From the NCBI GenBank assembly GCA_977020255.1, contig CDROCS010005599.1, forward strand, positions 1 to 64,000: a DNA stretch of 64,000 bases. Reading direction: 5' to 3'. Source of the stretch: Obrimoposthia wandeli. Taxonomy: Eukaryota. The notes under the pieces were generated by a model, which saw only the letters and a program-made list of their open reading frames with translations, was not told the origin of the DNA and ran no database searches. Of this stretch, positions 1 to 12,059 are shown in pieces; within the stretch, counting starts at the first letter, position 1; each line of letters opens with the position of its first letter. The translations under genes were made by a program, and so were the position numbers.

Positions 1-126
1 TTCAGACACTTCACTGATTTCTCCTATACTGGCACGATGTATTTGATTATTAATATCCCTTGCCGCTTCTTCTGGATTACCTGCCAGAATTATAGGCCGA
101 CCGACGATGATATGTGACGCACCACA
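1..126 (-). pseudogene. pyrF: C-terminal fragment of an orotidine-5'-phosphate decarboxylase-like gene, joined out of frame to the truncated aspA; open to the window edge
   Basis: Hand translation of 126->1: CGASHIIVGRPIILAGNPEEAARDINNQIHRASIGEISEVSE. This resembles the OMP decarboxylase C-terminal GxxxxVVGRPI...dP..aa..i motif. No 5' part of the gene is present. Confidence 0.6.
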
Positions 127-1168
127 CGCTATACCAAGCATCGAACTCTTGGCCGAGCGTCATGGGCACCGCGTCTTGTAGTTGGGTGCGCCCCATCTTG
201 ACCACATCTGAGAACTCAACCGCTTTTTGCTTGAATTGATAACACAGAGCAGACAATGCACTGACATACTCTTGATGGCTCAATAAAATAGCTAAGCGAA
301 TGGCAGTGGGGTAAGCGTCATTGGTAGATTGCGACAAGTTAACATGATTATTCGGATGTAAATGCTGATAGTCACCGCGCACATATCCCAGTATTTCTAG
401 GGCGCGGTTAGCGATCACTTCATTGGCGTTCATGTTGGTAGAAGTACCAGCGCCGCCTTGAATAACATCGACCACAAAATGTGAATGCCACTTCCCGGCA
501 ATGATTTCATCACAGGCTTGGCAAATAGCTGTCGCTTTGCTCTCATCGAGCATCCCCAGCTTGCGATTGGCTTTAGCCGCGGCTTTTTTCACCATCGCCA
601 GTGCACTGACCAGTTTTGGAAAATGCTGCAGTTGAATACCGGTGATGGCAAAATTTTCTGTGGCGCGAAGCGTTTGTACACCGTAGAGCGCATGATTTGG
701 GACGTCGCGTTCACCGAGTAAATCTGTCTCTGTGCGAGTGCTATTTTGTTGTAGTGCAGTGAGCTGCCATTGCTGACGTTGCATTTCCCATGCTAATAAA
801 AGTGCTGCCAGAGATGCGGTACGCTGCGAGCTGCTGAGCCACTGCTGTAGGGCACTGCGCTCAATCAGTAACAGAGTCGATTCTGTTATGGTTTGATAGT
901 GTATTGCAGCTGTTGTGCTTGAGCTGGCTGGCTCATTCAGCAGTGAATTAATGAGAGTGGGTGCATTGATTGGCAATGAATTGATCGCACAAGATGTAAC
1001 CTGTCCCTGCAATAAAATAGTGAGCTGCTGCGCTGCTAGCAGAGGCAATGAGGCGTTTTTGGCCAGCGCTGACAAGCGGCAAATCTTTAGCAACTCGCTA
1101 AACTCGCTCTCTTCTAAGTGCTCGCATTTAAGGGCTGTTTTGATTAACTTTTTATTATTGGCGTTCAT
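77..1168 (-). pseudogene. aspA: N-terminal degenerate cNMP-binding-like domain fused to aspartate ammonia-lyase; truncated after GQEFDAWYSV
   Basis: Aspartase motifs RTETDLLGERDVP, YGVQTLRATENF, QGGAGTSTNMNANEVIAN, HPNNHVNLSQSTND and KMGRTQLQDAVPMTLGQEF are present. The SSxMPxKxN signature and C-terminal half are absent. About 140 aa of N-terminal extension contains LTILLQGQV...LLLIERSALQQWL. Confidence 0.85.
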
Positions 1169-1291
1169 TTATTTACTCGTACGCTTGAGCGTATTTAAAC
1201 GATAAAAGAGTGCGTGATTCTTGAACGCAAAGACTGACTGAAAGTAGAGCGCGAACGTGAATGCTGCACTATCAGACTATGAAAAGGTCTT

Positions 1292-1342
1292 GCATATGTA
1301 AAATATTATAAATCTGTTAAAAGGATTTGTTTTTCTGATGCA
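1292..1342 (-). promoter_or_regulatory. Copy 1 of a shared 51-nt element with a LysR-type T-N11-A box, upstream of the aspA fusion
   Basis: Minus strand reads tgcatcagaaaaacaaatccttttaacagatttataatattttacatatgc; it aligns without gaps to copies at 2631 and 5392. Confidence 0.7.
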
Positions 1343-1504
1343 CAGAGGCTGCGCTTGATCGTACCGGTACGACAACTCATTGCCACTTGGCCGTTTATTC
1401 GACAAGTTATAGCAGAGAAATTCCCGAGAGATAAAGGGTAAATGCAGTGGAAAATGACGGCGGGTGACTCTTCCTTGAGTCAGTAGAATGGTGTGTCTAG
1501 GAGA

Positions 1505-2479
1505 CTATTGGGGATTAGTGTCGGGGTCAGTTTGTTGCGCCAGGTTTTTATAAAAACGCTGATCGGTAAAGACTGATTGTGCCAGTTCGGCGGCGCGCGC
1601 TTTCAAGGTATTGATGAACGCATCGGCCACGGGAGTCGAGCGCAAACGTGAAATCTTTGCGACCCCTAAACGTAGTGGTCGCAACTCTTCACGCAGTGGT
1701 ATCGCGACAATCTCACTGCCATCCAACGCTAAGTTATTCACCAGTGGGGTATTAAACAGAGAGTAGCCAAAACCATTGGCCACTAGGCCGCGCACCATGC
1801 CTAAAGATTGTGCGCGATAGGCAAAATTCGGTTCCAAATCTTGGCTGAGAAAGAGCGAAAAGAAGTACTCGCGACTCATGGGCCAATCTAACAACACCAT
1901 AGGGTACTCGACGAGTTCTGCCAGTGATAACTCGGTACTTTCAGCCAGTGGGTGGTCCTTTGCCAATGCGACGTAAGGGGGGAATTCAATGATCGGCTCA
2001 AAGTCGATATCGTTGGGCAGCTGTAAATCATAAGTCAGTGCCAGCTCATAGCGTCCCTCTAGCAAACTCTCGATGATGTCTTTTTGGTGGCTTTCATCAC
2101 ACTGAATATTGACCTCAGGATAGGTTTCAATAAATTTTTTCATCAGCGAGGGCAATAATATTGGGGTAAACGTTGGAAAGCTGACGATCCGCAGCGTGCC
2201 GGCGATGTCTTTGCCTAACGTGCTGGCGTAGTGGCCTAAATTATCGGCATCGAGTAACAGTTGCTTTGATTTGAGAATAAATTGACGCCCAGCGGCCGTC
2301 AGTGAAAGCCCCTGTGCGTGATGACGGACAAATAACTGTAATCCAGTGGCATCTTCTAAATGCAATATAGCCGATGAGATAGAAGGCTGTGAGACATGTA
2401 GCTCTTCAGCAGCGCGAGTGACACTGCTGTGCTCACCGGCTTTGACGAAATAACGTAAGTGTTTCAGTGTGAAATGCAT
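1505..2479 (-). CDS. LysR family transcriptional regulator
   Basis: N-terminal HTH LKHLRYFVKAGEHSSVTRAAEELHVSQPSISSAI plus substrate-binding domain; divergent from the flavoprotein operon. Confidence 0.95.
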   Translation of the reverse strand: MHFTLKHLRYFVKAGEHSSVTRAAEELHVSQPSISSAILHLEDATGLQLFVRHHAQGLSLTAAGRQFILKSKQLLLDADNLGHYASTLGKDIAGTLRIVSFPTFTPILLPSLMKKFIETYPEVNIQCDESHQKDIIESLLEGRYELALTYDLQLPNDIDFEPIIEFPPYVALAKDHPLAESTELSLAELVEYPMVLLDWPMSREYFFSLFLSQDLEPNFAYRAQSLGMVRGLVANGFGYSLFNTPLVNNLALDGSEIVAIPLREELRPLRLGVAKISRLRSTPVADAFINTLKARAAELAQSVFTDQRFYKNLAQQTDPDTNPQ

Positions 2480-2630
2480 CTTGGCAGCCTCTTGTTTGTC
2501 GCAGAATTTATCGCACTGTCCTGCATCAATAATTAATTACTAAAAACCATACTAGATTAAAAATAATTATTCAAAGGTTTCCACCGGCGTTAATTTGTCG
2601 CGGATGGGCAGCGAGTTATCGTTTTATATC

Positions 2631-2681
2631 TGCATAGGTTTTTTTGATCTACTTGTTAAGTTAATAATATTTTAACAATGC
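2631..2681 (+). promoter_or_regulatory. Copy 2 of the shared 51-nt element, upstream of the flavoprotein operon
   Basis: tgcataggtttttttgatctacttgttaagttaataatattttaacaatgc. Confidence 0.75.
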
Positions 2682-2736
2682 AAAGAGTTTTTCTACTCTG
2701 GATCAATCGCTAAAGGAAATAAAACAGGACACAGAG

Positions 2737-3996
2737 ATGACAGTTGAAAACATAGACACTTTGGTTATCGGTGCCGGGCAAGCCGGTGTGGCAATGAGTG
2801 AGCATTTAAGTAAGTTAGAAGTGCCACACATCGTATTAGAACGTGACCGTATTGCCGAGCGCTGGCGCACCGGTCGTTGGGATTCACTAGTGGCAAATGG
2901 CCCGGCGTGGCACGATCGCTTTCCCGGTTTAGAGTTTGAAGGGGTCGATGATGATGCATTCGCCTCTAAAGAGCGGGTCGCCGACTACTTTGTCGAATAC
3001 GCCGCTAAGTTTAAAGCACCAGTGCGTACCGGTGTTGCGGTGACCAAAGTGACACGCAATGCCAATCAGTCAGGTTTTATTGTTGAAACCTCTGCTGGGG
3101 TGATTCACGCCAGCCGTGTTGTGGCGGCAACGGGGCCTTTCCAGCGCCCGGTTATTCCACCGATAGCCCCTAAAGATGGGCAGCTACACCAAATACACTC
3201 GGCGGATTATCGCAACCCAGAGCAGTTGCCAGAAGGAGGAGTGCTGGTGGTAGGCGCAGGCTCTTCAGGCGTGCAAATAGCCGATGAGTTGCGCGGTGCC
3301 GGCAGACAGGTTTATCTCTCCGTTGGCGCACATGATCGTCCACCACGGGCTTATCGCAATCGAGATTTTGTCTGGTGGTTAGGCGTACTGGGTGAATGGG
3401 ATGCGGCGGCGATGAAGCCCGGAGCTGAGCATGTCACTATCGCGGTGAGCGGTGCTAAAGGTGGTCAGACCATCGATTTTAGAAAATTGGCCCATCAGGG
3501 TATTACGCTCACCGGACTGACTGAGTCATTTGCGGATGGCAAGGTGACTTTTCAAGGAGATCTAGTCGGTAATATCGCCCGTGGTGATGCCAACTACAAC
3601 GCGCTGCTAGATGCGGCTGATGCCTATATTACTCGCAATGGTTTAGACCTGCCTGAAGAGCCGCAAGCACGCATTGTTCTAGCAGAACCTGATTGTATGA
3701 CCCATCCAATACGCGAGCTAGATCTAGCGCAAGCCGGTATTAATTCCATTATTTGGGCGACCGGTTTTGCGGTGGATTACAACTGGATGGAAGTAGACGC
3801 CTTCGATGACAAAGGCAAGCCACAGCACCAGCGAGGCGTATCGAGTGAGCCTGGAATTTATTTCATCGGGTTGCCGTGGCAGTCGCGCCGCGGCTCATCT
3901 TTCATCTGGGGAGTGTGGCACGACGCAAAGTATGTCGCCGATCACATTGAGACCCAGCGCAAGTATTTAGAATACCGCGACCCTTCACAGCGCTAA
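2737..3996 (+). CDS. FAD/NAD(P)-dependent oxidoreductase, flavin-containing monooxygenase (class B-like)
   Basis: Two Rossmann motifs (VIGAGQAG, VVGAGSSG), FMO-like QIHSADYRNP and WATGF; RBS GGA upstream. Confidence 0.9.
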   Translation: MTVENIDTLVIGAGQAGVAMSEHLSKLEVPHIVLERDRIAERWRTGRWDSLVANGPAWHDRFPGLEFEGVDDDAFASKERVADYFVEYAAKFKAPVRTGVAVTKVTRNANQSGFIVETSAGVIHASRVVAATGPFQRPVIPPIAPKDGQLHQIHSADYRNPEQLPEGGVLVVGAGSSGVQIADELRGAGRQVYLSVGAHDRPPRAYRNRDFVWWLGVLGEWDAAAMKPGAEHVTIAVSGAKGGQTIDFRKLAHQGITLTGLTESFADGKVTFQGDLVGNIARGDANYNALLDAADAYITRNGLDLPEEPQARIVLAEPDCMTHPIRELDLAQAGINSIIWATGFAVDYNWMEVDAFDDKGKPQHQRGVSSEPGIYFIGLPWQSRRGSSFIWGVWHDAKYVADHIETQRKYLEYRDPSQR

Positions 3997-4009
3997 TCGC
4001 GTTTATCGG

Positions 4010-4029
4010 TGTGGCTCTGTTGAGCCACA
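4010..4029 (+). other. Intergenic stem-loop
   Basis: tgtggctc-tgtt-gagccaca, a perfect 8-bp stem between the monooxygenase and Rid genes. Confidence 0.4.
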
Positions 4030-4075
4030 TCTTTGCTTTTCATAGCGTTTAGCACAGAGTTTTTCGGAGTGAAAA

Positions 4076-4492
4076 ATGGCAACACATACTAGAATTCGCA
4101 TGTTTAACACCAAAGAGACCTACCCTAATCAGAGTCTAGATAATGATCTCTGTCAGGCGGTTCGCGCTGGTAATACGGTGTATGTTCGCGGTCAAGTAGG
4201 CACTGATTTTGATGGTAATTTAGTAGGTTTAGGTGATCCAGGTGCACAAGCTGAGCAGGCGATGAAAAATGTTAAGCAGCTGTTGGAAGAGGCGGGCTCA
4301 GACCTCAGTCACGTGGTCAAGACAACAACGTATATAACTGATCCACGCTATCGCGAAGCGGTATACCGCGAGACCGGGAAATGGTTTAAGGGAGTATTTC
4401 CTATCTCTACCGGCCTAGTGGTGCAAGGTTTAGCACAGCCGCAGTGGTTAATGGAAATCGATATTATCGCGGTGATTCCCGACGGTAATTAG
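4076..4492 (+). CDS. Rid (YjgF/YER057c/UK114) family protein lacking the RidA active-site Arg
   Basis: AVRAGNTVYVRGQVG, QAEQAMKNVKQLLEEAG, PISTGLVVQGLAQPQWLMEIDIIA; PIST sits where RidA has PARS. Confidence 0.9.
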   Translation: MATHTRIRMFNTKETYPNQSLDNDLCQAVRAGNTVYVRGQVGTDFDGNLVGLGDPGAQAEQAMKNVKQLLEEAGSDLSHVVKTTTYITDPRYREAVYRETGKWFKGVFPISTGLVVQGLAQPQWLMEIDIIAVIPDGN

Positions 4493-4519
4493 CGTTAATA
4501 AAATGATCTAGGAGTTGCT

Positions 4520-5191
4520 ATGACTTTTTCAGTCGCTGGAGTTTGCCCAGAAACAGGCATGGTGGGTTGCATCATCACCTCATCAAGCATTTGTGTCACT
4601 AGCCGTTGCGCCTTTACGCGCAGCGGTACGGGTGTCGCCCTCACGCAAAATATAACGAATCCAGATTTGGGGCCTTTGGCGCTGGATTTGCTACAGCGCG
4701 GTGATGATGTGGCCGCGGTGATGCAGGCGCTGGGCAAGGCTGACGCTGACGTGCAGTGGCGCCAGCTCGGCGTACTGAGCTTAGACGGCCAAAGTCAGAC
4801 GTTTAGCGGGGAGCGAGCATTGGGAATACACGCCACCGCAAGCGGAAAAAACTGTATCGCCATGGGTAATTTATTGGCCAACACAGCAGTGCCACAGGTC
4901 ATGGTTGAAGCGTTTGAAGCCAGCACAGGACATTTGGCGCAGCGCTTACTGACCGCTCTAGAGGCTGGATTGGCAGCAGGTGGGGAGATGGGGCCCATTC
5001 ACTCGGCCGGATTGCGAGTGAACGCAGAACCGGCTTGGCCAGTGGTTGACTTACGGGTTGATTGGCACCAGAAGCCTATTGCCGAACTAGGGGCGCTGTG
5101 GCGTAACTATCAACCACAAATGCAGGCTTATATTACCCGCGCCACAGACCCTGCTAATGCCGAGTCTTACGGTGTGCCAGGCGACGAGTAG
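4520..5191 (+). CDS. DUF1028 family protein (Ntn-hydrolase superfamily)
   Basis: Starts MTFSVAG (Thr2), with SQNITNP-like TQNITNP, QWRQLGV, GNLLAN, AGGE...HSAGL and VDLRVDWH motifs. Confidence 0.9.
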   Translation: MTFSVAGVCPETGMVGCIITSSSICVTSRCAFTRSGTGVALTQNITNPDLGPLALDLLQRGDDVAAVMQALGKADADVQWRQLGVLSLDGQSQTFSGERALGIHATASGKNCIAMGNLLANTAVPQVMVEAFEASTGHLAQRLLTALEAGLAAGGEMGPIHSAGLRVNAEPAWPVVDLRVDWHQKPIAELGALWRNYQPQMQAYITRATDPANAESYGVPGDE

Positions 5192-5391
5192 CACTTATCT
5201 ATTAAGGCTCACGCAGTGTCTGGGATATGTTCGTGCCACCACAATCCTTGTGCGAGTGGTGGTTGACAGTCTTAGGGGGAACGACTGGATGCACTTGTAT
5301 TAGCTGTCGAGCGCTATTTTTTGCTGCATATCGATTCGCGCCAGCTTGAGGGTGCTGGCAATGCTGTTTGATGTAGCCAGCTGCTACTTCC

Positions 5392-5442
5392 TGTATTCGT
5401 TTTATTTATTCTAAACCTAAGAATTTAATATTTTACTAATGC
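5392..5442 (+). promoter_or_regulatory. Copy 3 of the shared 51-nt element, upstream of the ABC transporter operon
   Basis: tgtattcgttttatttattctaaacctaagaatttaatattttactaatgc. Confidence 0.7.
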
Positions 5443-5546
5443 TGAGTGAAACCCTAACGTCTTAATAGATTAAACAGTGATCAGCCGAGTTTGCAAAGTA
5501 AAGCTTACAGAGCTGCTATCACGTTAAACCATCGAGAATATACGCC

Positions 5547-6617
5547 ATGAAACACGCTATAAATATAAAAAATGTCAGCAAGTATTACGGCGACTATCGC
5601 GCGATTAAAGATATCTCTTTTGATATCAAAGACAACGAATTTTTTACCTTACTCGGCCCCAGTGGCTGCGGTAAAACAACCTTATTGCGAATGATTGCCG
5701 GTTTTGAAATGCCCAGCGGTGGTGTGATTAAACTACACGGTACGGATATCCAATCACTGCCCGCTCATCAGCGCCGTGTTAATACGGTGTTCCAAAATTA
5801 CGCACTCTTTCCTCATATGAACTTAGCGCAAAACATTGGTTTTGGTTTGCAAATGCTTAATTGGAATGAAGAGAAAATAGCAGCGCGAGTAGATGAAATG
5901 CTCGAGTTGGTCCACATGCGACCGTTTGCAGCGCGTATGCCTTCAGCATTGTCAGGAGGGCAACAGCAGCGCATAGCACTGGCCAGAGCACTGGCACCGC
6001 AACCAGAGGTTTTACTCTTAGATGAACCGCTATCGGCACTGGATTTAAAGCTGCGCCAATCAATGCGTGATGAGTTACAGCAATTACAGCGCGATACTGG
6101 GATTACCTTTATTTTTGTTACTCACGACCAGGAAGAGGCGCTGGCGATGTCGGACAGGATTTGTGTGCTAGCTGAGGGGGAAGTGCAACAACTGAGTAGC
6201 CCTAGTGAAATTTATGAAAATCCGAGTAATAAATTTGTCGCTGACTTTATTGGCGAAACCAACTTTATGCCAGTCACCATTCATTGTGACGATAGTGCAA
6301 CGGCTGCAATTACCAACCCTCTTGGGATTGACCTGAAGGTGCCCAATGAGGGTTATAGCCAAGGGCAAGAAGCGACCATGTCGCTGCGGCCAGAAAAAAT
6401 TTCTATCAACACTGCGGGGCTGGAGGTGAATTTACAAGGTGAGATTGTACAGCGTACCTACATGGGTGGTTATACCCACTATAAGGTTCGCATAGCGAAT
6501 GCCACTGAACTGCGTGTATCCAAGCGCAATACGATTAGTAACGATACCGAGTACAGCCTCAATCAACGGGTAGATATTGGCTTTAGCAAAGCGTCGGTGC
6601 GGGTGTTGTGCCAATGA
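5547..6617 (+). CDS. ABC transporter ATP-binding protein, PotA-like
   Basis: Walker A GPSGCGKT, signature LSGGQQQ, Walker B LLLDEP, C-terminal TOBE-like region. Confidence 0.95.
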   Translation: MKHAINIKNVSKYYGDYRAIKDISFDIKDNEFFTLLGPSGCGKTTLLRMIAGFEMPSGGVIKLHGTDIQSLPAHQRRVNTVFQNYALFPHMNLAQNIGFGLQMLNWNEEKIAARVDEMLELVHMRPFAARMPSALSGGQQQRIALARALAPQPEVLLLDEPLSALDLKLRQSMRDELQQLQRDTGITFIFVTHDQEEALAMSDRICVLAEGEVQQLSSPSEIYENPSNKFVADFIGETNFMPVTIHCDDSATAAITNPLGIDLKVPNEGYSQGQEATMSLRPEKISINTAGLEVNLQGEIVQRTYMGGYTHYKVRIANATELRVSKRNTISNDTEYSLNQRVDIGFSKASVRVLCQ

Positions 6618-7489
6618 AAAAGCTGAGTTGGAATTTTTGGGGTCTGTTACCGGCCTATGTAGTGATGTCACTGTTAATGGTGTTACCGCTGTTAATTATC
6701 TTTTACGTATCACTGATGAGCTCAGATCCCTACGGGGGTTTTAAGGCAGTTTTCTCACTGCAATCGTACAGTCAGATTCTCTATAGCGCAGACTGGGATG
6801 ACAACTTAGTCCTCAATTTACAGTACTTGAAAATCATTGCCAGAACCTTGCTGCTCTCCGGCGGCACCGCGGTGATTTGTCTACTGGTTAGCTTCCCGGT
6901 TGCCTACTATATTTCGCGTCAGAGCCACAACGTAAAAACCTTACTGCTCTACTTAGTCACGCTGCCATTTTGGGTCAGCATGGTGGTACGAGTGTACGCT
7001 TGGGTACTTATTTTAAGTAACGATGGGGTGTTGGAAAACGGGTTGCGCTTTTTTGGTTTGGTTGGCGACATCGACAGCTTACTCTACAACAATACCGCGA
7101 TGATGGTGGGTATGGTGTACACCTATATCCCACTGATGATCTTACCTATCTACGCCAGCATCGAAAAATTAGACACGCGTTTGATTGAGGCCGCTAGCGA
7201 TCTTTACAGTAGTCGGATGAATACGTTAAGAACCATCATTTTACCACTGTGTAAACCCGGGATCGTCGCGGGATTTGTCTTAGTGTTGGTGCCTTGTCTG
7301 GGTACGGTGCTTGAACCGATGTTGTTAGGTGGCGGCAAGACCATGATGTTAGGTAATTTGATTCAAAATCAATTTGGCGTGGCGCGCAACTGGTCTTTCG
7401 GTGCCAGTTTAACCGTATTACTACTGTGTATCGTGTTAGCGTTCTTGATGTTCCAAGCGCGCAGAACTAGCGCGTTGAAGGAGCTGTGA
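6614..7489 (+). CDS. ABC transporter permease, PotB-like
   Basis: LPFWVSMVVRVYAW and EAA motif LIEAASDLY. The ATG at 6614 overlaps the upstream stop (ATGA), so I prefer it to the GTG at 6608. Confidence 0.93.
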   Translation: MKKLSWNFWGLLPAYVVMSLLMVLPLLIIFYVSLMSSDPYGGFKAVFSLQSYSQILYSADWDDNLVLNLQYLKIIARTLLLSGGTAVICLLVSFPVAYYISRQSHNVKTLLLYLVTLPFWVSMVVRVYAWVLILSNDGVLENGLRFFGLVGDIDSLLYNNTAMMVGMVYTYIPLMILPIYASIEKLDTRLIEAASDLYSSRMNTLRTIILPLCKPGIVAGFVLVLVPCLGTVLEPMLLGGGKTMMLGNLIQNQFGVARNWSFGASLTVLLLCIVLAFLMFQARRTSALKEL

Positions 7490-8298
7490 TGAATATCTCA
7501 ACTATGTTTAAGCCCAATCGCGATGCAAAGCACTACCCAGGGTTTGGCGCGATAGGAATACTATTTTTTACTTTCCTCTATGTGCCGATACTAGTGATCA
7601 TCGCCTATTCATTTAACAGTAATCGTATTGTCTCGGTGTGGCAGGAGTTTTCTTGGCAGTGGTACGCCAGTGCGCTGCAAAACGAAGGCTTACTCAATGC
7701 ATTACGCGTCTCATTGACGGTGGCACTGTTTGCTACCTTGATAGCCACCGCGATAGCGATTGCTGCCGCACTAGTCTTGGCGAGAGGAAAAAACGTTAAA
7801 CACGCCAAACTGTCGACGGGAGTGATTAATTTACCGCTGATGTTGCCAGAGATTGTCTTTGCAGTGGCTATCTTGATTCTATTTTCGCAACTGGGAATTC
7901 AAAGTGGCTTGTTAAAACTAATTTTAGCGCACAGTGCTTTTTGTATTCCCTTCGCATTTTTACCTATTCGCGCTCGATTACAGGGAATGGATACCAACTT
8001 AGAACAGGCCGCGCAAGACTTGTACGCTACCCCTTTAGTGACTTTTCGCCGTATTACGCTGCCCTTAATCGCCCCCGGTATTTTTGCTGGCGCCATGCTC
8101 AGTTTTGTTATCTCGATGGATGATTTCATCACCAGCAATATTGTATCTGGTGGTGGTGCAACTACTTTACCGGTCTACATATTCTCTTTGGTAAAGCAGG
8201 GTGTCTCACCTGAGCTAAACGCAATATCGACCTTAATCATGGTGGCATCACTATTGATAGCCACACCTTGTTGGCTCATCGCCAAACGCAGCCGCTGA
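7489..8298 (+). CDS. ABC transporter permease, PotC-like
   Basis: YVPILVIIAYSFN, LEQAAQDLYA, SMDDF, TTLPVYIF; the ATG overlaps the upstream stop. Confidence 0.93.
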   Translation: MNISTMFKPNRDAKHYPGFGAIGILFFTFLYVPILVIIAYSFNSNRIVSVWQEFSWQWYASALQNEGLLNALRVSLTVALFATLIATAIAIAAALVLARGKNVKHAKLSTGVINLPLMLPEIVFAVAILILFSQLGIQSGLLKLILAHSAFCIPFAFLPIRARLQGMDTNLEQAAQDLYATPLVTFRRITLPLIAPGIFAGAMLSFVISMDDFITSNIVSGGGATTLPVYIFSLVKQGVSPELNAISTLIMVASLLIATPCWLIAKRSR

Positions 8299-8356
8299 GT
8301 AGACGCTTGGCTGCGAACCCGCATCACTAAATAGTCAAAATAAAAGGAATAAATCT

Positions 8357-9385
8357 ATGAAGTCTTTTACAAAAATCAGCTTATTGGCACTGAGTATATC
8401 TCTGACAACAGGGGCGAGCGCCGCGGGTAAACAGCTTAATGTTTACACTTGGGCGGAGTCAATTGACCCGGTGCTGATCGAGAATTTTCAAAAAGAAACC
8501 GGGATTGAGATTACTTTAGACAGCTATACCTCAAATGAGGATTTACTGGCAAAGCTGAAGTCGGGTAGTAGCGATTATGATGTGGTGTTCCCCAGCCAGC
8601 ACTTCGTTAAAATTATGATCCAAGAAAATTTGCTCAAAAATATTGATGCCAAGAATATGGCTGCATTTAAGCTGGTAGATGATAAGTGGAAAAACCAATG
8701 GTGGGATGCAACCTCAGAATATTCGATCCCCTTTGTTTATGGCACCGCAGGTTATGCTGTCAATCGCGATAAATATAAGGGGCCGGCAAATTCTTGGAAA
8801 GAATTCTTTGAGCCTACAGGAGCCGCTGTTGGGAACGTTGCAGTATTTAGTACCCCCGATGAGATTATCCCCGCGGCACAGCTTTACTTGGGCATAGACT
8901 TTTGCACTGAAAACAGTGCTGATATGAAAAAAGTTTTCCAGTTGTTAAAGAAACAAAAAGAAGATGTGGCCGTCTACAGCTCCGATAATATTAGCTCGCG
9001 TATTGCCAGCGGTGAAGTTGTGATGCACAACTGGTGGGATGGCGATACGATGCGTGCGCGCAAAAATAACAACGCACCTATCGAGTACGCGCAGCCTAAA
9101 GAAGGTTTAGTCGGTTGGTTAGATTCTATGGTGGTACCAAAGAACTCGCGCAACTCGGATAACGCTAAAACGTTTATTAACTGGATGAGTGAAAAAGACA
9201 ACGCGACAACAGAGTATAACTACTATGCTCACTCTTCTGCGGTGGCGATTGATGCAAGCAAAGCCGTCCACAAAGAAGAGAACTCACCTGAGATATTCCC
9301 CACAGCGCCGATTAAATTTACTCGCGCCTGCTCGCCAGCAGCACAAAAATTAGTTGATAAGGTATGGACGCAGTTACTACAGTAA
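8357..9385 (+). CDS. Periplasmic solute-binding protein, PotD/PotF family
   Basis: Signal peptide; LNVYTW, SNEDLLAKL..G...YDVVFPS, PKEG..GWLD motifs. Confidence 0.92.
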   Translation: MKSFTKISLLALSISLTTGASAAGKQLNVYTWAESIDPVLIENFQKETGIEITLDSYTSNEDLLAKLKSGSSDYDVVFPSQHFVKIMIQENLLKNIDAKNMAAFKLVDDKWKNQWWDATSEYSIPFVYGTAGYAVNRDKYKGPANSWKEFFEPTGAAVGNVAVFSTPDEIIPAAQLYLGIDFCTENSADMKKVFQLLKKQKEDVAVYSSDNISSRIASGEVVMHNWWDGDTMRARKNNNAPIEYAQPKEGLVGWLDSMVVPKNSRNSDNAKTFINWMSEKDNATTEYNYYAHSSAVAIDASKAVHKEENSPEIFPTAPIKFTRACSPAAQKLVDKVWTQLLQ

Positions 9386-9521
9386 ATTAGATAGACTTTA
9401 GGTGACCTCTGTACGATATAGCGAGCATCGTTATGGTGTAGAGGTCAGCTAGCTATAAACGCGGAAAAACACCAAGGCAAGTATTCGGTCTGACAAGAAA
9501 TAGCCATATCTGGCTATGAGT

Positions 9522-10598
9522 TCAAATTGTCTTAGGCAACGATTCAATTTTCCCACCGGCGCTACTGCTCAAAAGTACCATTGCATCACCTATTTTCATG
9601 TTGGCTGCAGAGCCGTGAATGGCCTTTTCAGCGTCCTCTAGCGCTTGATCGAACTGGTTGGCAATACGTTGAAAGCTATCAACCTCCGCCGTTGTTTTAT
9701 CACTTATTTCAGACATTGAACTCAGTAAAGCCTCAATGCGTTGGTAGGCCTCGTTAGTGGTGCTCGCCATACCGCTTTCGCTCTGCGAACCGATAGAGGC
9801 CATTGATGATTCAATCGCTTTAGCCATCGTCGATATTTTTTCCCTCAGTGTCACTTCATTGCTCTGTAATTGTTGCAGGTTATGATTGATGCTTTTGGCA
9901 TCTTTGGTTGAATTCTGTGCCAATGTTTTTATTTCGTCGGCAACCACCGCAAAACCTCTACCCGCTTCACCCGCTCTCGCCGCTTCAATCGCCGCATTTA
10001 GCGCCAGTAAATTAGTTTGGTCTGAGGTGAAAGTGATGGCAGTGGCGAGTTGAGAAATACCGCTTAGATCACTGAGAAAATGATTGAGTTCGCGGTTTAA
10101 ATCTTCAGAAGTGCTAGAGAACTGATGGATTTCTCCACTGAGTGATTGCGTTTTATCACAGATCGTTGAAAACCCCAGTCGTAACTCATTGAGAGCGTGT
10201 TGATCTTTATTGAGTGCTTGCGCAATTATTTTTAGTTCATTAATTGATTGAGTTACCGCACAAGCGAGCTCAGTAAAGAAGAGTAAACGCTCTTTAGACG
10301 CCGCGTTTACTTTTGTGGCGTTTGTCAGTACCTGTTGTGCAAATTGTTGCAATTCACTGATGTCAGCTGATACTGGAGATGTGTCTAACACTGTGGGCTC
10401 GGTGGGCAAAGGCTCTGTTTTAAATATGATAAAAGGAATCAATAAACACAAGAAATACGTCAGTGCGATCAGAGACCAATTAAATGAAGCCCCCTGTGAA
10501 AAAGAGCCCTGCTGATAGCAGGCATTAATGACACTGGCCGCTATTATGCAAGATAAAAGGCTGCTGGCGGTGTAGGCATTACGTAAGCGTAAAAACAT
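9522..10598 (-). CDS. Methyl-accepting chemotaxis protein with minimal sensory region
   Basis: Signalling hairpin [31 protein letters not shown]; two N-terminal hydrophobic segments with a short loop; RBS AAGGA upstream of the ATG. Confidence 0.92.
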
Positions 10599-10994
10599 TT
10601 CAAATCCTTCTCAGAAGTGAATAAAGCGTAGCAGTGAGCGGTAACGCTGATAATCAATGCAACGATGATATGGAAAAGCGAAAATACTAAAGCGTTATCG
10701 TAAGTAAATATTAGTCCAAATAAGACAAAATTCATCAATTTATGATCAGTTATCTATTATCAATGATTTAAATGTGCTGATTAAAAAATAAGCTATATTT
10801 AATGTGAGCTTGATAATACATAAGCAGATACTTTTCTTACGTTGAGTTATTGCTTCAAACGCCATCGGAAATGGACCTAGGGGTCAAAAAAATTAAGTTG
10901 ATATTCATGACTGTTGGCATTATGTTGGTATCTTATAATCTAGGAATAATACCTAGACATTGAGAAGTCGAACGTTCTATATTGAGGTTACATT

Positions 10995-12059
10995 ATGAGC
11001 ATTAGGACTTTTACAGCGTATTATAAGTGGCTGTTTGTAGTAGCTATTGTTTTATTGCAAGGTTGCATCCAGAGCGAGCCAGAAAAATTTAGTTGGCAGC
11101 TACAGTCTCAGGCAAATGAAAATAGCTTGGACTATAAAGAATTACTAGAGTTCTCAGCGCAAGTGAAGCTGATGAGTGCGAATCGTTTTAATATACAGAT
11201 TCACCCCAGCGGTGGTGTGACCGCAGGTGCCGACATTTACACGGCAGTAAAAGATGGTCGGGTTGAAATGGGTAACGGCTGGCCCAATTGGTGGTCGGGT
11301 AATAATCCGGCTTGGGCGCTACTCAACGCTGGCCCTTTCGACTTTATGAATATAGATGCCTCGATGATGTTCTTTATGGCGGGCGAGGGTAGCGCACTGG
11401 CTAATTCACTGTCGCGTCCGCACGGTATTCTATGGCGCCCAGCGTGGTGGCCGGGAATGGAATTTGGCTTGCTAGCGAAAGAACCTATTACTAGCTTGCA
11501 AGATCTAGCGATGAAGAGAGTGCGCATCGGACCTGGATTACCTAGCGAGGTTTTAGCAGCGGCATCAGGTGCTTATACTATCCCCTTGCTACCTGAAGAG
11601 ATTCGCGGTGCTCTAGAGAGTGGTGATCTTGATGCGGTTGAATGGACTACGACTACAGGGGCTTGGGATTTAGGGTTAAGCGATATCAGTAAACACGCGA
11701 TAGTCCCTGCCGTTTGGCAACCATCTGTACTGGCGGACTTTTTAATCAATGAGAAAGCCTACGCGGCGCTGCCGGTAGATCTACAGGCTATCCTTGAGTC
11801 GGCGATTAAAGCTTACACCTTGCAAACAACTTTAAAAGCAAAAGTAGCTGATTTCGCATCACTTAAAAAATTCACTGAAGCTGGCGTTAGCATCACCAAG
11901 TGGAGCGACAGTGATTTGAAAAAATGGCGCGAGGTGACGGAGCGGGTGATGCACAAGTACGCGGAAGAAAGCGCGATTAACAAAGAAATCATTGAGAAAA
12001 AGAAATTGTTTAAACAACAGTACAACGCTTATTACGAGTGGTTTGGCAGTTATGAGTAA
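10995..12059 (+). CDS. TRAP-type (DctP/TakP-like) solute-binding lipoprotein, with no DctQM nearby
   Basis: Lipobox LQGC; AVKDGRVEMG, MKRVRIGPG, ALESGDLDAVEW motifs. Confidence 0.85.
   Translation: MSIRTFTAYYKWLFVVAIVLLQGCIQSEPEKFSWQLQSQANENSLDYKELLEFSAQVKLMSANRFNIQIHPSGGVTAGADIYTAVKDGRVEMGNGWPNWWSGNNPAWALLNAGPFDFMNIDASMMFFMAGEGSALANSLSRPHGILWRPAWWPGMEFGLLAKEPITSLQDLAMKRVRIGPGLPSEVLAAASGAYTIPLLPEEIRGALESGDLDAVEWTTTTGAWDLGLSDISKHAIVPAVWQPSVLADFLINEKAYAALPVDLQAILESAIKAYTLQTTLKAKVADFASLKKFTEAGVSITKWSDSDLKKWREVTERVMHKYAEESAINKEIIEKKKLFKQQYNAYYEWFGSYE

What the first reader, a model, noticed from the sequence alone, without database searches (positions are those of the whole stretch)
1292..9385. 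Three gap-free copies of a 51-nt element define a hidden LysR regulon: monooxygenase operon, 'polyamine' ABC importer and cNMP-aspartase
Seen in sequence: 1292-1342 (-), 2631-2681 (+) and 5392-5442 (+) share TGYAT-N2-G-N8-ATY-N15-TAATATTTTA-N3-ATGC at identical spacing. At least 21 positions are invariant. Each copy faces a gene start, 124, 56 and 105 nt away. Established: T-N11-A is the LysR recognition box. Inference: the LysR at 1505-2479 co-activates three transcription units that annotation alone would treat as unrelated, making one uptake-plus-catabolism system for a single N-containing substrate.
Basis: partly seen in the sequence, partly recalled or inferred. Interest (0 to 1): 0.85.

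Follow-up and report, generated by a model that had tools for sequence, protein, structure and literature searches.

The report
Histamine-catabolism LysR (HinK-type) operator-promoter sites
The three 51-nt copies are real, conserved promoter-operator modules of a LysR regulator related to Pseudomonas HinK, and they most likely tie together a bacterial regulon for taking up and breaking down histamine: a known kind of system found here in a marine bacterial lineage.

Summary
Observation confirmed. Three gap-free copies share 22 invariant positions, and none is expected by chance. Each really extends to about 70 nt, because a TAnnnT -10-like hexamer follows at a fixed distance.

The element reads as a textbook LysR-type activated promoter. 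It has a dyad TGCAT-N11-ATGCA centred near -66, a second AT-rich dyad overlapping a -35-like TTTACA, and a weak -10.

The same module occurs at 56 unique sites in the fetched loci of about 25 genomes. Every site found, bar two with an unassigned ORF downstream, sits upstream of one of eight gene families: FMO, RidA, M20 deacylase, ω-aminotransferase, aldehyde dehydrogenase, long aspartase, APC permease and PotA-like ABC. Among 61 related genomes, well-formed sites occur only in the 8 that carry the LysR orthologue, and they lie next to it. Elsewhere the pattern hits at control level.

The LysR is closest to P. aeruginosa HinK (PDB 6M5F/3FZV, E 1e-59). The gene set equals the published Hin histamine pathway (HinF/L/H/G/I/D/C/A).

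Binding and induction remain untested.

Verdict: a new member of a known kind, of moderate interest. The untested extras are a HinK-controlled PotABCD-like importer and an aspartase with a CAP-like N-terminal domain.

The parts
1273..1342 (-). Copy 1 plus its -10: operator-promoter module of the aspartase (hinI-like) gene. Dyad 1322-1342, AT-rich second site 1299-1312, -35-like TTTACA 1297-1302, -10-like TAGTCT 1274-1279, predicted start about 1267.
   Evidence: Conserved at the orthologous place in L013, C4052, Marinomonas, L028 and L029, while the flanks are not.
2631..2700 (+). Copy 2 plus its -10: operator-promoter module of hinF-hinL-hinH, divergent from the LysR gene. Dyad 2631-2651, AT-rich site 2661-2674, -35-like TTTAAC 2671-2676, -10-like TACTCT 2694-2699, predicted start about 2706.
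   Evidence: It is one of two conserved islands in the six-genome intergenic alignment A1.
5392..5461 (+). Copy 3 plus its -10: operator-promoter module of the PotABCD-like importer. Dyad 5392-5412, AT-rich site 5422-5435, -35-like TTTACT 5432-5437, -10-like TAACGT 5455-5460, predicted start about 5467.
   Evidence: It is the only conserved block in alignment A3 with L013 and L014.
1505..2479 (-). LysR-type regulator, HinK-like (324 aa).
   Evidence: HTH_1 + LysR_substrate. Best solved relatives are 3FZV/6M5F, P. aeruginosa HinK, at E 1.5e-59 over the full length; the next is CysB at 6e-26. There is a single family member per marine genome, always next to site-bearing operons.
131..1168 (-). 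5' part (347 codons) of a long aspartate ammonia-lyase (HinI-like). It has a 145-aa N-terminal extension. It is cut at the contig start.
   Evidence: Lyase_1 covers only 1-179 of 312 profile positions. Full-length orthologues are 612-643 aa and pass the aspA equivalog cut-off. Homology ends at base 131.
2737..3996 (+). Flavin monooxygenase, HinF-like (imidazoleacetate monooxygenase by homology).
   Evidence: Pfam Pyr_redox_3/FMO-like. It is 76-79% identical to Pseudomonas proteins that head FMO-RidA-DUF1028-M20 clusters next to HinK orthologues. HinF is listed as FAD-monooxygenase EC 1.14.13.5 in PMC6467879.
4076..4492 (+). RidA-family protein, HinL-like (enamine/imine deaminase).
   Evidence: Ribonuc_L-PSP. 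87-90% identical in the Pseudomonas loci. HinL is listed as 'enamine deaminase'.
4520..5191 (+). DUF1028 Ntn-hydrolase-fold protein, HinH-like amidase.
   Evidence: PF06267, E 1e-59. PDB 2IMH. It holds the third position of the F-L-H(-G) cluster. HinH is listed as 'amidase'.
5547..9385 (+). PotABCD-like ABC importer: ATPase 5547-6617, permeases 6608-7489 and 7486-8298, binding protein 8357-9385. Predicted carrier of the regulon's substrate.
   Evidence: Pfam. The binding protein scores far below the PotD/PotF equivalog cut-offs, at about E 1e-42 to SpuE/PotD/PotF structures. A site lies upstream in the window, L013 and L014, and upstream of hinG-potABCD in Marinomonas.
2522..2576 (-). Second conserved island in the hinK-hinF spacer. 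It probably holds the hinK promoter and leader, with a sigma-70-like pair at 2593-2566 (-).
   Evidence: Alignment A1; promoter scan. Function is inferred only.

Best explanation
Each copy is the operator-plus-promoter of a LysR-type activated sigma-70 promoter.

A HinK-like LysR tetramer, encoded at 1505-2479, is proposed to occupy about 52 bp:
- a recognition dyad TGCAT-N11-ATGCA. This is the T-N11-A box, element positions 1-21, centred about 66 bp upstream of the predicted start;
- a second, AT-rich dyad TTAAT-N12-ATGCA, positions 31-52. It lies three helical turns away and overlaps a -35-like TTTACA.

A weak -10 (TAnnCT, positions 64-69) makes the promoter dependent on the activator.

By analogy with Pseudomonas HinK, the inducer is imidazole-4-acetate, made from histamine. 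The activated regulator then switches on three units:
- hinF-hinL-hinH, which opens and degrades the imidazole-acetate ring towards aspartate;
- the aspartase gene hinI, followed in relatives by the aldehyde dehydrogenase hinD;
- a PotABCD-like importer.

In relatives the same module also precedes hinG (M20 deformylase), hinC (ω-aminotransferase) and hinA (APC permease).

Shown: sequence conservation, genome-wide specificity, co-occurrence with the regulator, and homology to the Hin system. Inferred: binding, transcription start sites, the inducer, and the importer's ligand.
For: 1. Three exact-register copies; none expected by chance.

2. The module is conserved at orthologous promoters while the flanking intergenic DNA is not.

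3. Iterative PWM scanning of the fetched loci gave 56 unique sites. Of the 56 hits scoring 33 bits or more, 54 lie upstream of, and oriented towards, a homologue of FMO (22), aminotransferase (9), long aspartase (9), M20 (7), PotA (3), aldehyde dehydrogenase (2), RidA (1) or APC permease (1). Two have no assigned ORF.

4. In 48 strong sites, positions 5, 18, 38, 40-44, 64, 65 and 69 are invariant. The half-sites TGcAT/ATnCA recur at both ends.

5. Whole-genome pattern scans of five roughly 5-Mb genomes gave 3-6 well-formed sites each, all clustered at hin loci. The reversed-pattern control gave 0-3.

6. In Marinomonas PE14-40 the FMO gene lies 3.3 Mb from the main cluster, yet it keeps the site. 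This argues for a trans-acting regulator.

7. Among 61 relatives, the 8 genomes with a LysR orthologue of at least 66% identity are exactly the 8 with well-formed sites. Of their 27 hits, 22 lie near the LysR gene. The other 53 genomes have 41 hits against 33 control hits.

8. The LysR is closest to HinK. HinK binds the hinD and hinF promoters, responds to imidazole-4-acetate, and controls hinDAC and hinFLHG (PMC8231116).

9. The enzyme list of the P. putida U Hin pathway matches family for family (PMC6467879; Pfam and NCBIfam).

10. Regulator and operator vary together between lineages. Pseudomonas HinK orthologues have a different recognition region and a different dyad (CTAG-N11-CTAG) at hinF.
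Against: - There is no direct evidence of binding, induction or transcription starts. No RNA runs hold this DNA.
- The consensus sigma-70 scan does not call the predicted promoters, because their -10 matches only 3 of 6. That fits activator dependence but is not proof.
- Identity to P. aeruginosa HinK is only about 37-45%, so strict orthology is not proven.
- One Pseudomonas (L022) carries the marine-type module upstream of its FMO gene. It has only Pseudomonas-type HinK paralogues, which breaks the regulator-operator covariation.
- P. putida uses two further regulators (HinB, HinJ), so a second factor cannot be excluded.
- The published HinK operator could not be read.
- In this window hinG, hinC, hinD and hinA are absent and hinI is truncated. 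The pathway is therefore complete only by reference to relatives and to sister contigs.
- The PWM-selected site set is partly circular for the positions used in selection.
Confidence: 0.8

Rival explanations
1. The modules are real cis-regulatory sites, but another factor reads them. Candidates are a second LysR, a HinB/HinJ-like regulator or a global nitrogen/carbon regulator. The adjacent LysR would be coincidental or would control only hinF.
For: P. putida U needs three regulators (HinB, HinJ, HinK) for histamine use. The most conserved part of the element is the AT-rich right half rather than the T-N11-A dyad. A Pseudomonas genome without a marine-type LysR still has the module.
Against: No other regulator gene is conserved in the clusters. 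Well-formed sites are found only in genomes with the LysR orthologue, and they lie within about 30 kb of it. Both ends of the element carry the same half-site, as expected for one dimer-of-dimers protein.
Confidence: 0.07
2. The LysR regulon is real, but it serves a substrate other than histamine. Candidates are another imidazole amine or derivative (N-acetylhistamine, carnosine/anserine products, histaminol) or a polyamine-like compound brought in by the PotABCD-like importer.
For: Identity to Pseudomonas HinK is moderate. The importer is of the polyamine type, and the histamine-induced binding protein PA0222 of P. aeruginosa binds GABA, not histamine. A histidinol-dehydrogenase paralogue sits in two of the clusters. 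No growth data exist for these bacteria.
Against: The catabolic core is 76-90% (FMO, RidA) and about 50% (DUF1028) identical to that of Pseudomonas hin loci. The full enzyme set maps one-to-one onto the published histamine-to-fumarate route: aminotransferase, aldehyde dehydrogenase, monooxygenase, two amidases, enamine deaminase and aspartase. Any alternative feed would probably still converge on imidazole-4-acetate.
Confidence: 0.12
3. The copies are a short dispersed repeat (REP/MITE-like) or chance AT-rich similarity, with no regulatory meaning.
For: The sequence is AT-rich, and the loose 17-nt core is common in the 1.35-Gb host assembly.
Against: Zero matches in shuffles. There are only 3-6 sites per 5-Mb genome, all at hin promoters and all correctly oriented. 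Conservation is position-specific, with variable spacers, rather than a repeat-like identity. The pattern is absent beyond background from 53 genomes that lack the regulator.
Confidence: 0.01

Closest known systems
HinK regulon of Pseudomonas aeruginosa PAO1 and P. putida U (histamine utilisation: hinDAC, hinFLHG, hinI; Wang et al. 2021 Sci Bull; de la Torre et al. 2018; reviewed in PMC8231116)
   Same: A LysR-type regulator of the same subfamily (best PDB hit 6M5F/3FZV). The same enzyme families in the same F-L-H(-G) order. Aspartase as the last step. An aminotransferase, aldehyde dehydrogenase and APC permease module. Several unlinked promoters sharing one operator.
   Different: - The dyad differs: TGCAT-N11-ATGCA here, against CTAG-N11-CTAG upstream of Pseudomonas hinF.
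- A complete PotABCD-type ABC importer is under the operator.
- The aspartase carries a 145-aa N-terminal CAP-like domain and is directly under the same operator. In P. putida, hinI is paired with another regulator, HinJ.
- No link to virulence is known here.
- Nothing has been tested experimentally.
Classical LysR-type activated promoters (for example CbnR/cbnA, BenM/benA, AtzR/atzDEF)
   Same: A T-N11-A recognition dyad near -65. An activation site overlapping -35. A weak -10. Divergent transcription of the regulator gene. A footprint-sized element of about 50-55 bp.
   Different: Here the activation-site half is better conserved than the recognition dyad. The start sites are only predicted.
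PotABCD / PotFGHI / SpuDEFGH polyamine importers
   Same: Four-component architecture with a TOBE-domain ATPase. The binding protein has the PotD/PotF fold family (E about 1e-42 to SpuE, PotD and PotF).
   Different: The binding protein scores far below the PotD and PotF equivalog cut-offs: 154 against 582 and 138 against 636 bits. It is regulated with histamine-catabolic genes. Its ligand is unknown.

Membership tests
HinK (LysR-type regulator of histamine utilisation) | LTTR architecture: N-terminal HTH_1 plus LysR substrate-binding domain | tested here: met
   PF00126 at E 1.5e-19 and PF03466 at E 2.4e-38.
HinK (LysR-type regulator of histamine utilisation) | Closer in sequence to HinK than to other characterised LTTRs | tested here: met
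   3FZV/6M5F at E 1.5e-59 over residues 3-301. The next is CysB at 6e-26. 6M5F is listed as HinK. No NCBIfam LTTR equivalog reaches its cut-off.
HinK (LysR-type regulator of histamine utilisation) | One-to-one orthology with PA0218 | tested here: inconclusive
   There is a single family member per marine genome at E<=1e-50. Identity to Pseudomonas HinK orthologues is only 36-38% in BLASTP. No reciprocal search in P. aeruginosa was possible.
HinK (LysR-type regulator of histamine utilisation) | Gene linked to hin catabolic and transport genes | tested here: met
   It lies next to hinF-L-H and hinI in the window, L013 and C4052. It lies next to hinI-hinD in Marinomonas and M. jannaschii.
HinK (LysR-type regulator of histamine utilisation) | [quoted passage not shown] | not testable with these tools
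   Known for P. aeruginosa only. Here it is inferred from the shared operator.
Hin histamine catabolic pathway | HinF monooxygenase, HinL RidA-type deaminase and HinH amidase encoded together | tested here: met
   Window 2737-5191. The names and EC numbers come from PMC6467879.
Hin histamine catabolic pathway | HinC aminotransferase, HinD aldehyde dehydrogenase, HinA permease and HinG deformylase present | tested here: not met
   There are no close homologues in the 64-kb window. They are present under the same operator in relatives and on sister contig C4052. The window's own genome cannot be completed, because the contig ends inside hinI.
Hin histamine catabolic pathway | Aspartate ammonia-lyase (HinI) as the terminal step | tested here: met
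   The full-length orthologue passes the aspA equivalog cut-off: 706.5 bits against 681.2. The window copy is truncated.
Hin histamine catabolic pathway | Growth on, or induction by, histamine | not testable with these tools
   No RNA data and no cultures.
LysR-type activated promoter | T-N11-A dyad about 65 bp upstream of the start, plus a second site at -35 | tested here: inconclusive
   The dyad and second site are conserved. Their positions are relative to a predicted -10, not a mapped one.
PotD/PotF polyamine-binding protein | Score above the NCBIfam equivalog cut-off | tested here: not met
   154 bits against 582 (PotD) and 138 against 636 (PotF).
cNMP-binding domain (aspartase N-terminus) | Match to PF00027 | tested here: not met
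   No Pfam hit at E<=5 for three orthologues. There are only predicted-structure neighbours, TM 0.64-0.73.

The most novel reading that the evidence does not exclude
In this marine lineage the HinK regulon has recruited two parts not described for Pseudomonas. The first is a complete PotABCD-type ABC importer, which would be the first ABC-type histamine (or imidazole-acetate) uptake system. The second is an aspartase fused to a CAP/cNMP-like sensor domain, which would put the last pathway step under allosteric small-molecule control.
Probability: 0.35. Interest if true: 0.5.

Novelty: new member of a known kind. Interest (0 to 1): 0.4.

Why it matters
- The work turns generically annotated genes ('flavoprotein involved in K+ transport', DUF1028, RidA, 'spermidine/putrescine' transporter) into a coherent, testable histamine-catabolic regulon. 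The bacteria are Oceanospirillales-like and associated with an animal-scale assembly. The nearest named relative is an Osedax symbiont.
- It gives a precise operator model for this branch of the HinK family, with half-sites, spacing and promoter geometry. The model can be used for regulon prediction or for an imidazole-acetate or histamine biosensor.
- It nominates a candidate ABC importer for a biogenic amine.
- It does not reveal a new regulatory principle.

Tried and rejected
- Scanning the window's own assembly was uninformative. G000 is a 1.35-Gb, 6912-contig mixed or eukaryotic assembly, and the short core hits thousands of times at control level.
- Before the HinK link appeared, I considered polyamine, β-alanine, ectoine/diaminobutyrate, pyrimidine (Rut-like) and nitrosuccinate pathways for the gene set. 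I dropped them because the Hin pathway accounts for every family at once.
- Another first-stage note guessed homarine (s1-241168). That does not fit the homology.
- A literature search for DUF1028 found nothing useful.
- The Wang et al. 2021 paper is not held, so the published HinK operator could not be compared.
- A hinF/hinDAC term search added nothing.
- Source names of FMO homologues are generic.
- Rfam found no RNA family in 1-12000.
- No RNA-seq run holds the locus.
- The consensus promoter scan does not detect the predicted weak promoters.
Contig C4052 was therefore read only in part.
- No clean T-N11-A dyad could be found in the second conserved island, 2522-2576.

Full report
**1. The observation**

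None has a mismatch. In 100 dinucleotide-preserving shuffles there were no matches even with three mismatches allowed. The 17-nt core alone occurs three times, with 1.5 two-mismatch matches expected.

I count 22 invariant positions in the 51 nt. All three copies are intergenic and face a start codon at 123, 55 and 104 intervening nt.

When the copies are aligned with their flanks, the shared register continues. A TAnnnT hexamer sits at element positions 64-69 in all three: TAGTCT, TACTCT and TAACGT. It lies 17 nt after a -35-like TTTACA, TTTAAC or TTTACT at positions 41-46. The unit is therefore about 70 nt and looks like a complete, weak sigma-70 promoter with upstream protein-binding sites.

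**2. The genes**

Pfam and NCBIfam give the following:
- a LysR-type regulator at 1505-2479 (-);
- a flavin monooxygenase at 2737-3996;
- a RidA-family protein at 4076-4492;
- a DUF1028 Ntn-hydrolase-fold protein at 4520-5191;
- a four-gene PotABCD-like ABC importer at 5547-9385. Its binding protein scores far below the PotD and PotF cut-offs;
- on the minus strand downstream of the regulator, the first 347 codons of an aspartate ammonia-lyase.

Full-length orthologues of that lyase are 612-643 aa. They pass the aspA equivalog threshold and carry an extra 145 N-terminal residues. In the window the gene stops being aspartase at base 131. Bases 1-130 encode the C-terminal tail of an OMP-decarboxylase-like protein in another frame. 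Because this is the very start of the contig, either an assembly junction or a real rearrangement is possible.

**3. Where the window comes from**

The window's assembly is 1.35 Gb in 6912 contigs, and the window contig is bacterial. The nearest monooxygenase (89%) belongs to a Nitrincola-like MAG and is also recorded as 'Osedax symbiont Rs1'. The same assembly holds at least three other contigs (C4052, C1089, C4584) with sister versions of the cluster, at about 75% DNA identity and with the same element.

**4. Comparative evidence for function**

Eighty loci encoding the monooxygenase were fetched.

- *Orthologous positions.* In the two closest relatives, all three elements are present at the orthologous positions, and the surrounding intergenic DNA has diverged. 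The six-genome alignment of the regulator-monooxygenase spacer shows just two conserved islands. One is the 70-nt element. The other is a block next to the regulator gene that probably holds its own promoter.
- *Gene families marked.* An iterated weight-matrix scan of the fetched loci found 56 unique sites. Of the 56 hits scoring 33 bits or more, 54 lie upstream of, and oriented towards, a homologue of one of eight families. Two have no assigned ORF downstream. The counts are monooxygenase 22, class-III aminotransferase 9, long aspartase 9, M20 ArgE-like deacylase 7, PotA 3, aldehyde dehydrogenase 2, RidA 1 and APC permease 1.
- *Consensus.* In 48 strong sites the consensus is TGcAT, a W-only tract, AT-n-Ca, a variable spacer, ttaaTAATATTTTA, N2, aAT-n-ca, a variable spacer, then c-n-TA-N2-cT. 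Positions 5, 18, 38, 40-44, 64, 65 and 69 are invariant. This site set was selected with a matrix that included those positions, so the invariance is partly circular. A site lacking them would still have passed the threshold.

**5. Specificity and link to the regulator**

A loose 14.5-base pattern was searched in five whole genomes of about 5 Mb. It gave 3-6 well-formed sites per genome, all clustered at these loci, plus scattered hits at the level of the reversed-pattern control.

In Marinomonas sp. PE14-40 the main cluster carries five sites. They precede:
- RidA-DUF1028;
- M20-PotABCD;
- the permease;
- the aminotransferase;
- aspartase-aldehyde dehydrogenase, which lies next to the regulator.

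The monooxygenase gene lies 3.3 Mb away and still has its own site. That arrangement is what a trans-acting regulon predicts.

In 61 genomes sampled around the Nitrincola MAG, eight have an orthologue of the LysR at 66-90% identity. These are exactly the eight with well-formed sites. Of their 27 pattern hits, 22 lie within about 30 kb of the regulator gene. The other 53 genomes have 41 hits against 33 for the control.

**6. What the regulon is**

The LysR's best solved relatives, by a wide margin, are 3FZV and 6M5F (E 1.5e-59, full length). 6M5F is HinK of P. aeruginosa.

HinK (PA0218) is the LysR-type regulator of histamine utilisation. It senses imidazole-4-acetate, binds the hinD and hinF promoters through a shared operator, and controls hinDAC and hinFLHG (PMC8231116). 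hinDAC encodes the aldehyde dehydrogenase, permease and aminotransferase.

The P. putida U pathway enzymes are listed as follows (PMC6467879):
- HinF, FAD-monooxygenase, EC 1.14.13.5;
- HinL, enamine deaminase;
- HinH, amidase;
- HinG, amidase, EC 3.5.1.8;
- HinI, aspartate ammonia-lyase;
- HinD, aldehyde dehydrogenase;
- HinA, permease.

This maps one-to-one onto the eight site-marked families here. The Pseudomonas loci in my set have the order monooxygenase-RidA-DUF1028-M20, with 76-90% identity for the first two. Beside them sits a LysR whose helix-turn-helix is essentially identical to PA0218. The window cluster is therefore hinI(truncated)-hinK-hinFLH plus an ABC importer.

**7. Mechanism**

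The element fits the standard LysR-type layout (established knowledge of the family).

- Positions 1-21 form the dyad TGCAT-N11-ATGCA, which contains T-N11-A.
- Positions 31-52 can be read as a second dyad with the same right half-site (TTAAT-N12-ATGCA). Its centre lies 30.5 bp, or three helical turns, from the first.
- The -35-like hexamer lies inside this second site.
- The -10 matches the consensus only at the three key positions, which explains why the generic promoter scan misses it.
- With a start about 7 nt after the -10, the first dyad is centred near -66.

All of this is inference from sequence. No start site or binding has been measured.

**8. Regulator and operator vary together, with one exception**

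Upstream of Pseudomonas hinF the conserved block has the same geometry but a different dyad, CTAG-N11-CTAG, followed by an A/T-rich block. Burkholderiaceae carry a version closer to the marine one. The recognition regions of the three regulator groups differ correspondingly.

The exception is Pseudomonas sp. H11T01 (L022). It has the marine-type module upstream of its monooxygenase gene but only Pseudomonas-type HinK paralogues. I cannot explain this beyond promoter exchange or relaxed specificity.

**9. What differs from the known system**

- A complete PotABCD-type importer is under the operator in the window, L013, L014 and Marinomonas. In P. aeruginosa only an orphan PotF-like binding protein, PA0222, is histamine-induced, and it binds GABA rather than histamine. 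The ligand here is open.
- The aspartase is directly under the operator. It carries a 145-aa N-terminal domain with no Pfam match.
- A histidinol-dehydrogenase paralogue accompanies the aspartase operon in two genera.

**10. Limits**

- No RNA data exist for this DNA.
- The published operator could not be read.
- hinG, hinC, hinD and hinA are not in the window.
- Contig assignment within the mixed assembly prevents completing this bacterium's regulon.

**Verdict**

The system is a new member of a known kind, the HinK histamine regulon, with an untested importer and a fused aspartase as its most original parts.

Noticed in passing
window 1-130: The contig starts with the 3' tail of an OMP-decarboxylase (pyrF-like) gene on the minus strand (PF00215 C-terminus, E 2.6e-5). 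It abuts the aspartase gene, out of frame, at codon 347. This is either an assembly junction at the contig end or a real rearrangement.
   Followed up: partly
window 733-1168 (-); L013 7636-8070 (-): The aspartase has a conserved 145-aa N-terminal extension with no Pfam match. Its predicted structure resembles cNMP/CAP-type β-barrels (TM 0.64-0.73). It may be an allosteric sensor domain on a catabolic aspartase.
   Followed up: partly
window 2522-2576: A second conserved island in the hinK-hinF spacer, invariant at about 23 positions across six genomes. It overlaps a sigma-70-like pair on the minus strand (2593-2566) and is probably the hinK promoter and leader. No clean LysR box was seen in it.
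   Followed up: partly
G000 contigs C4052 (L133, L134, L136, L138), C1089 (L137), C4584 (L139): The 1.35-Gb assembly holds several related bacteria. At least three other contigs carry sister hin clusters at about 75% DNA identity, with 84-89% identical proteins and the same operator. C4052 also has permease-site-aminotransferase.
   Followed up: partly
L124 460-1779 (-); L122 12358-13677 (+): A histidinol-dehydrogenase paralogue (439 aa) lies beside the aspartase-aldehyde dehydrogenase operon in Marinomonas and Marinobacterium jannaschii. It could feed imidazole alcohols or aldehydes into the pathway.
   Followed up: no
L013 9547-9946; L014 about 1000-1198: In the Nitrincola MAG about 420 nt (about 200 nt in L014) separate the promoter module from the hinF start, against 55 nt in the window. 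It is an unexplained long leader or insertion.
   Followed up: no
L022 9869-9938: Pseudomonas sp. H11T01 has the marine-type operator-promoter upstream of hinF, but only Pseudomonas-type HinK paralogues in its genome. This may be a promoter exchange.
   Followed up: partly
window 4008-4031 and 5340-5359: Terminator-like hairpins lie just after hinF (before hinL) and between hinH and copy 3. The latter fits a separate importer transcript, and the former may attenuate within the operon.
   Followed up: no
window 9522-10598 (-): A short methyl-accepting chemotaxis protein gene (358 aa) converges on the importer's binding-protein gene. No operator lies upstream. A link to histamine chemotaxis is pure speculation.
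   Followed up: no
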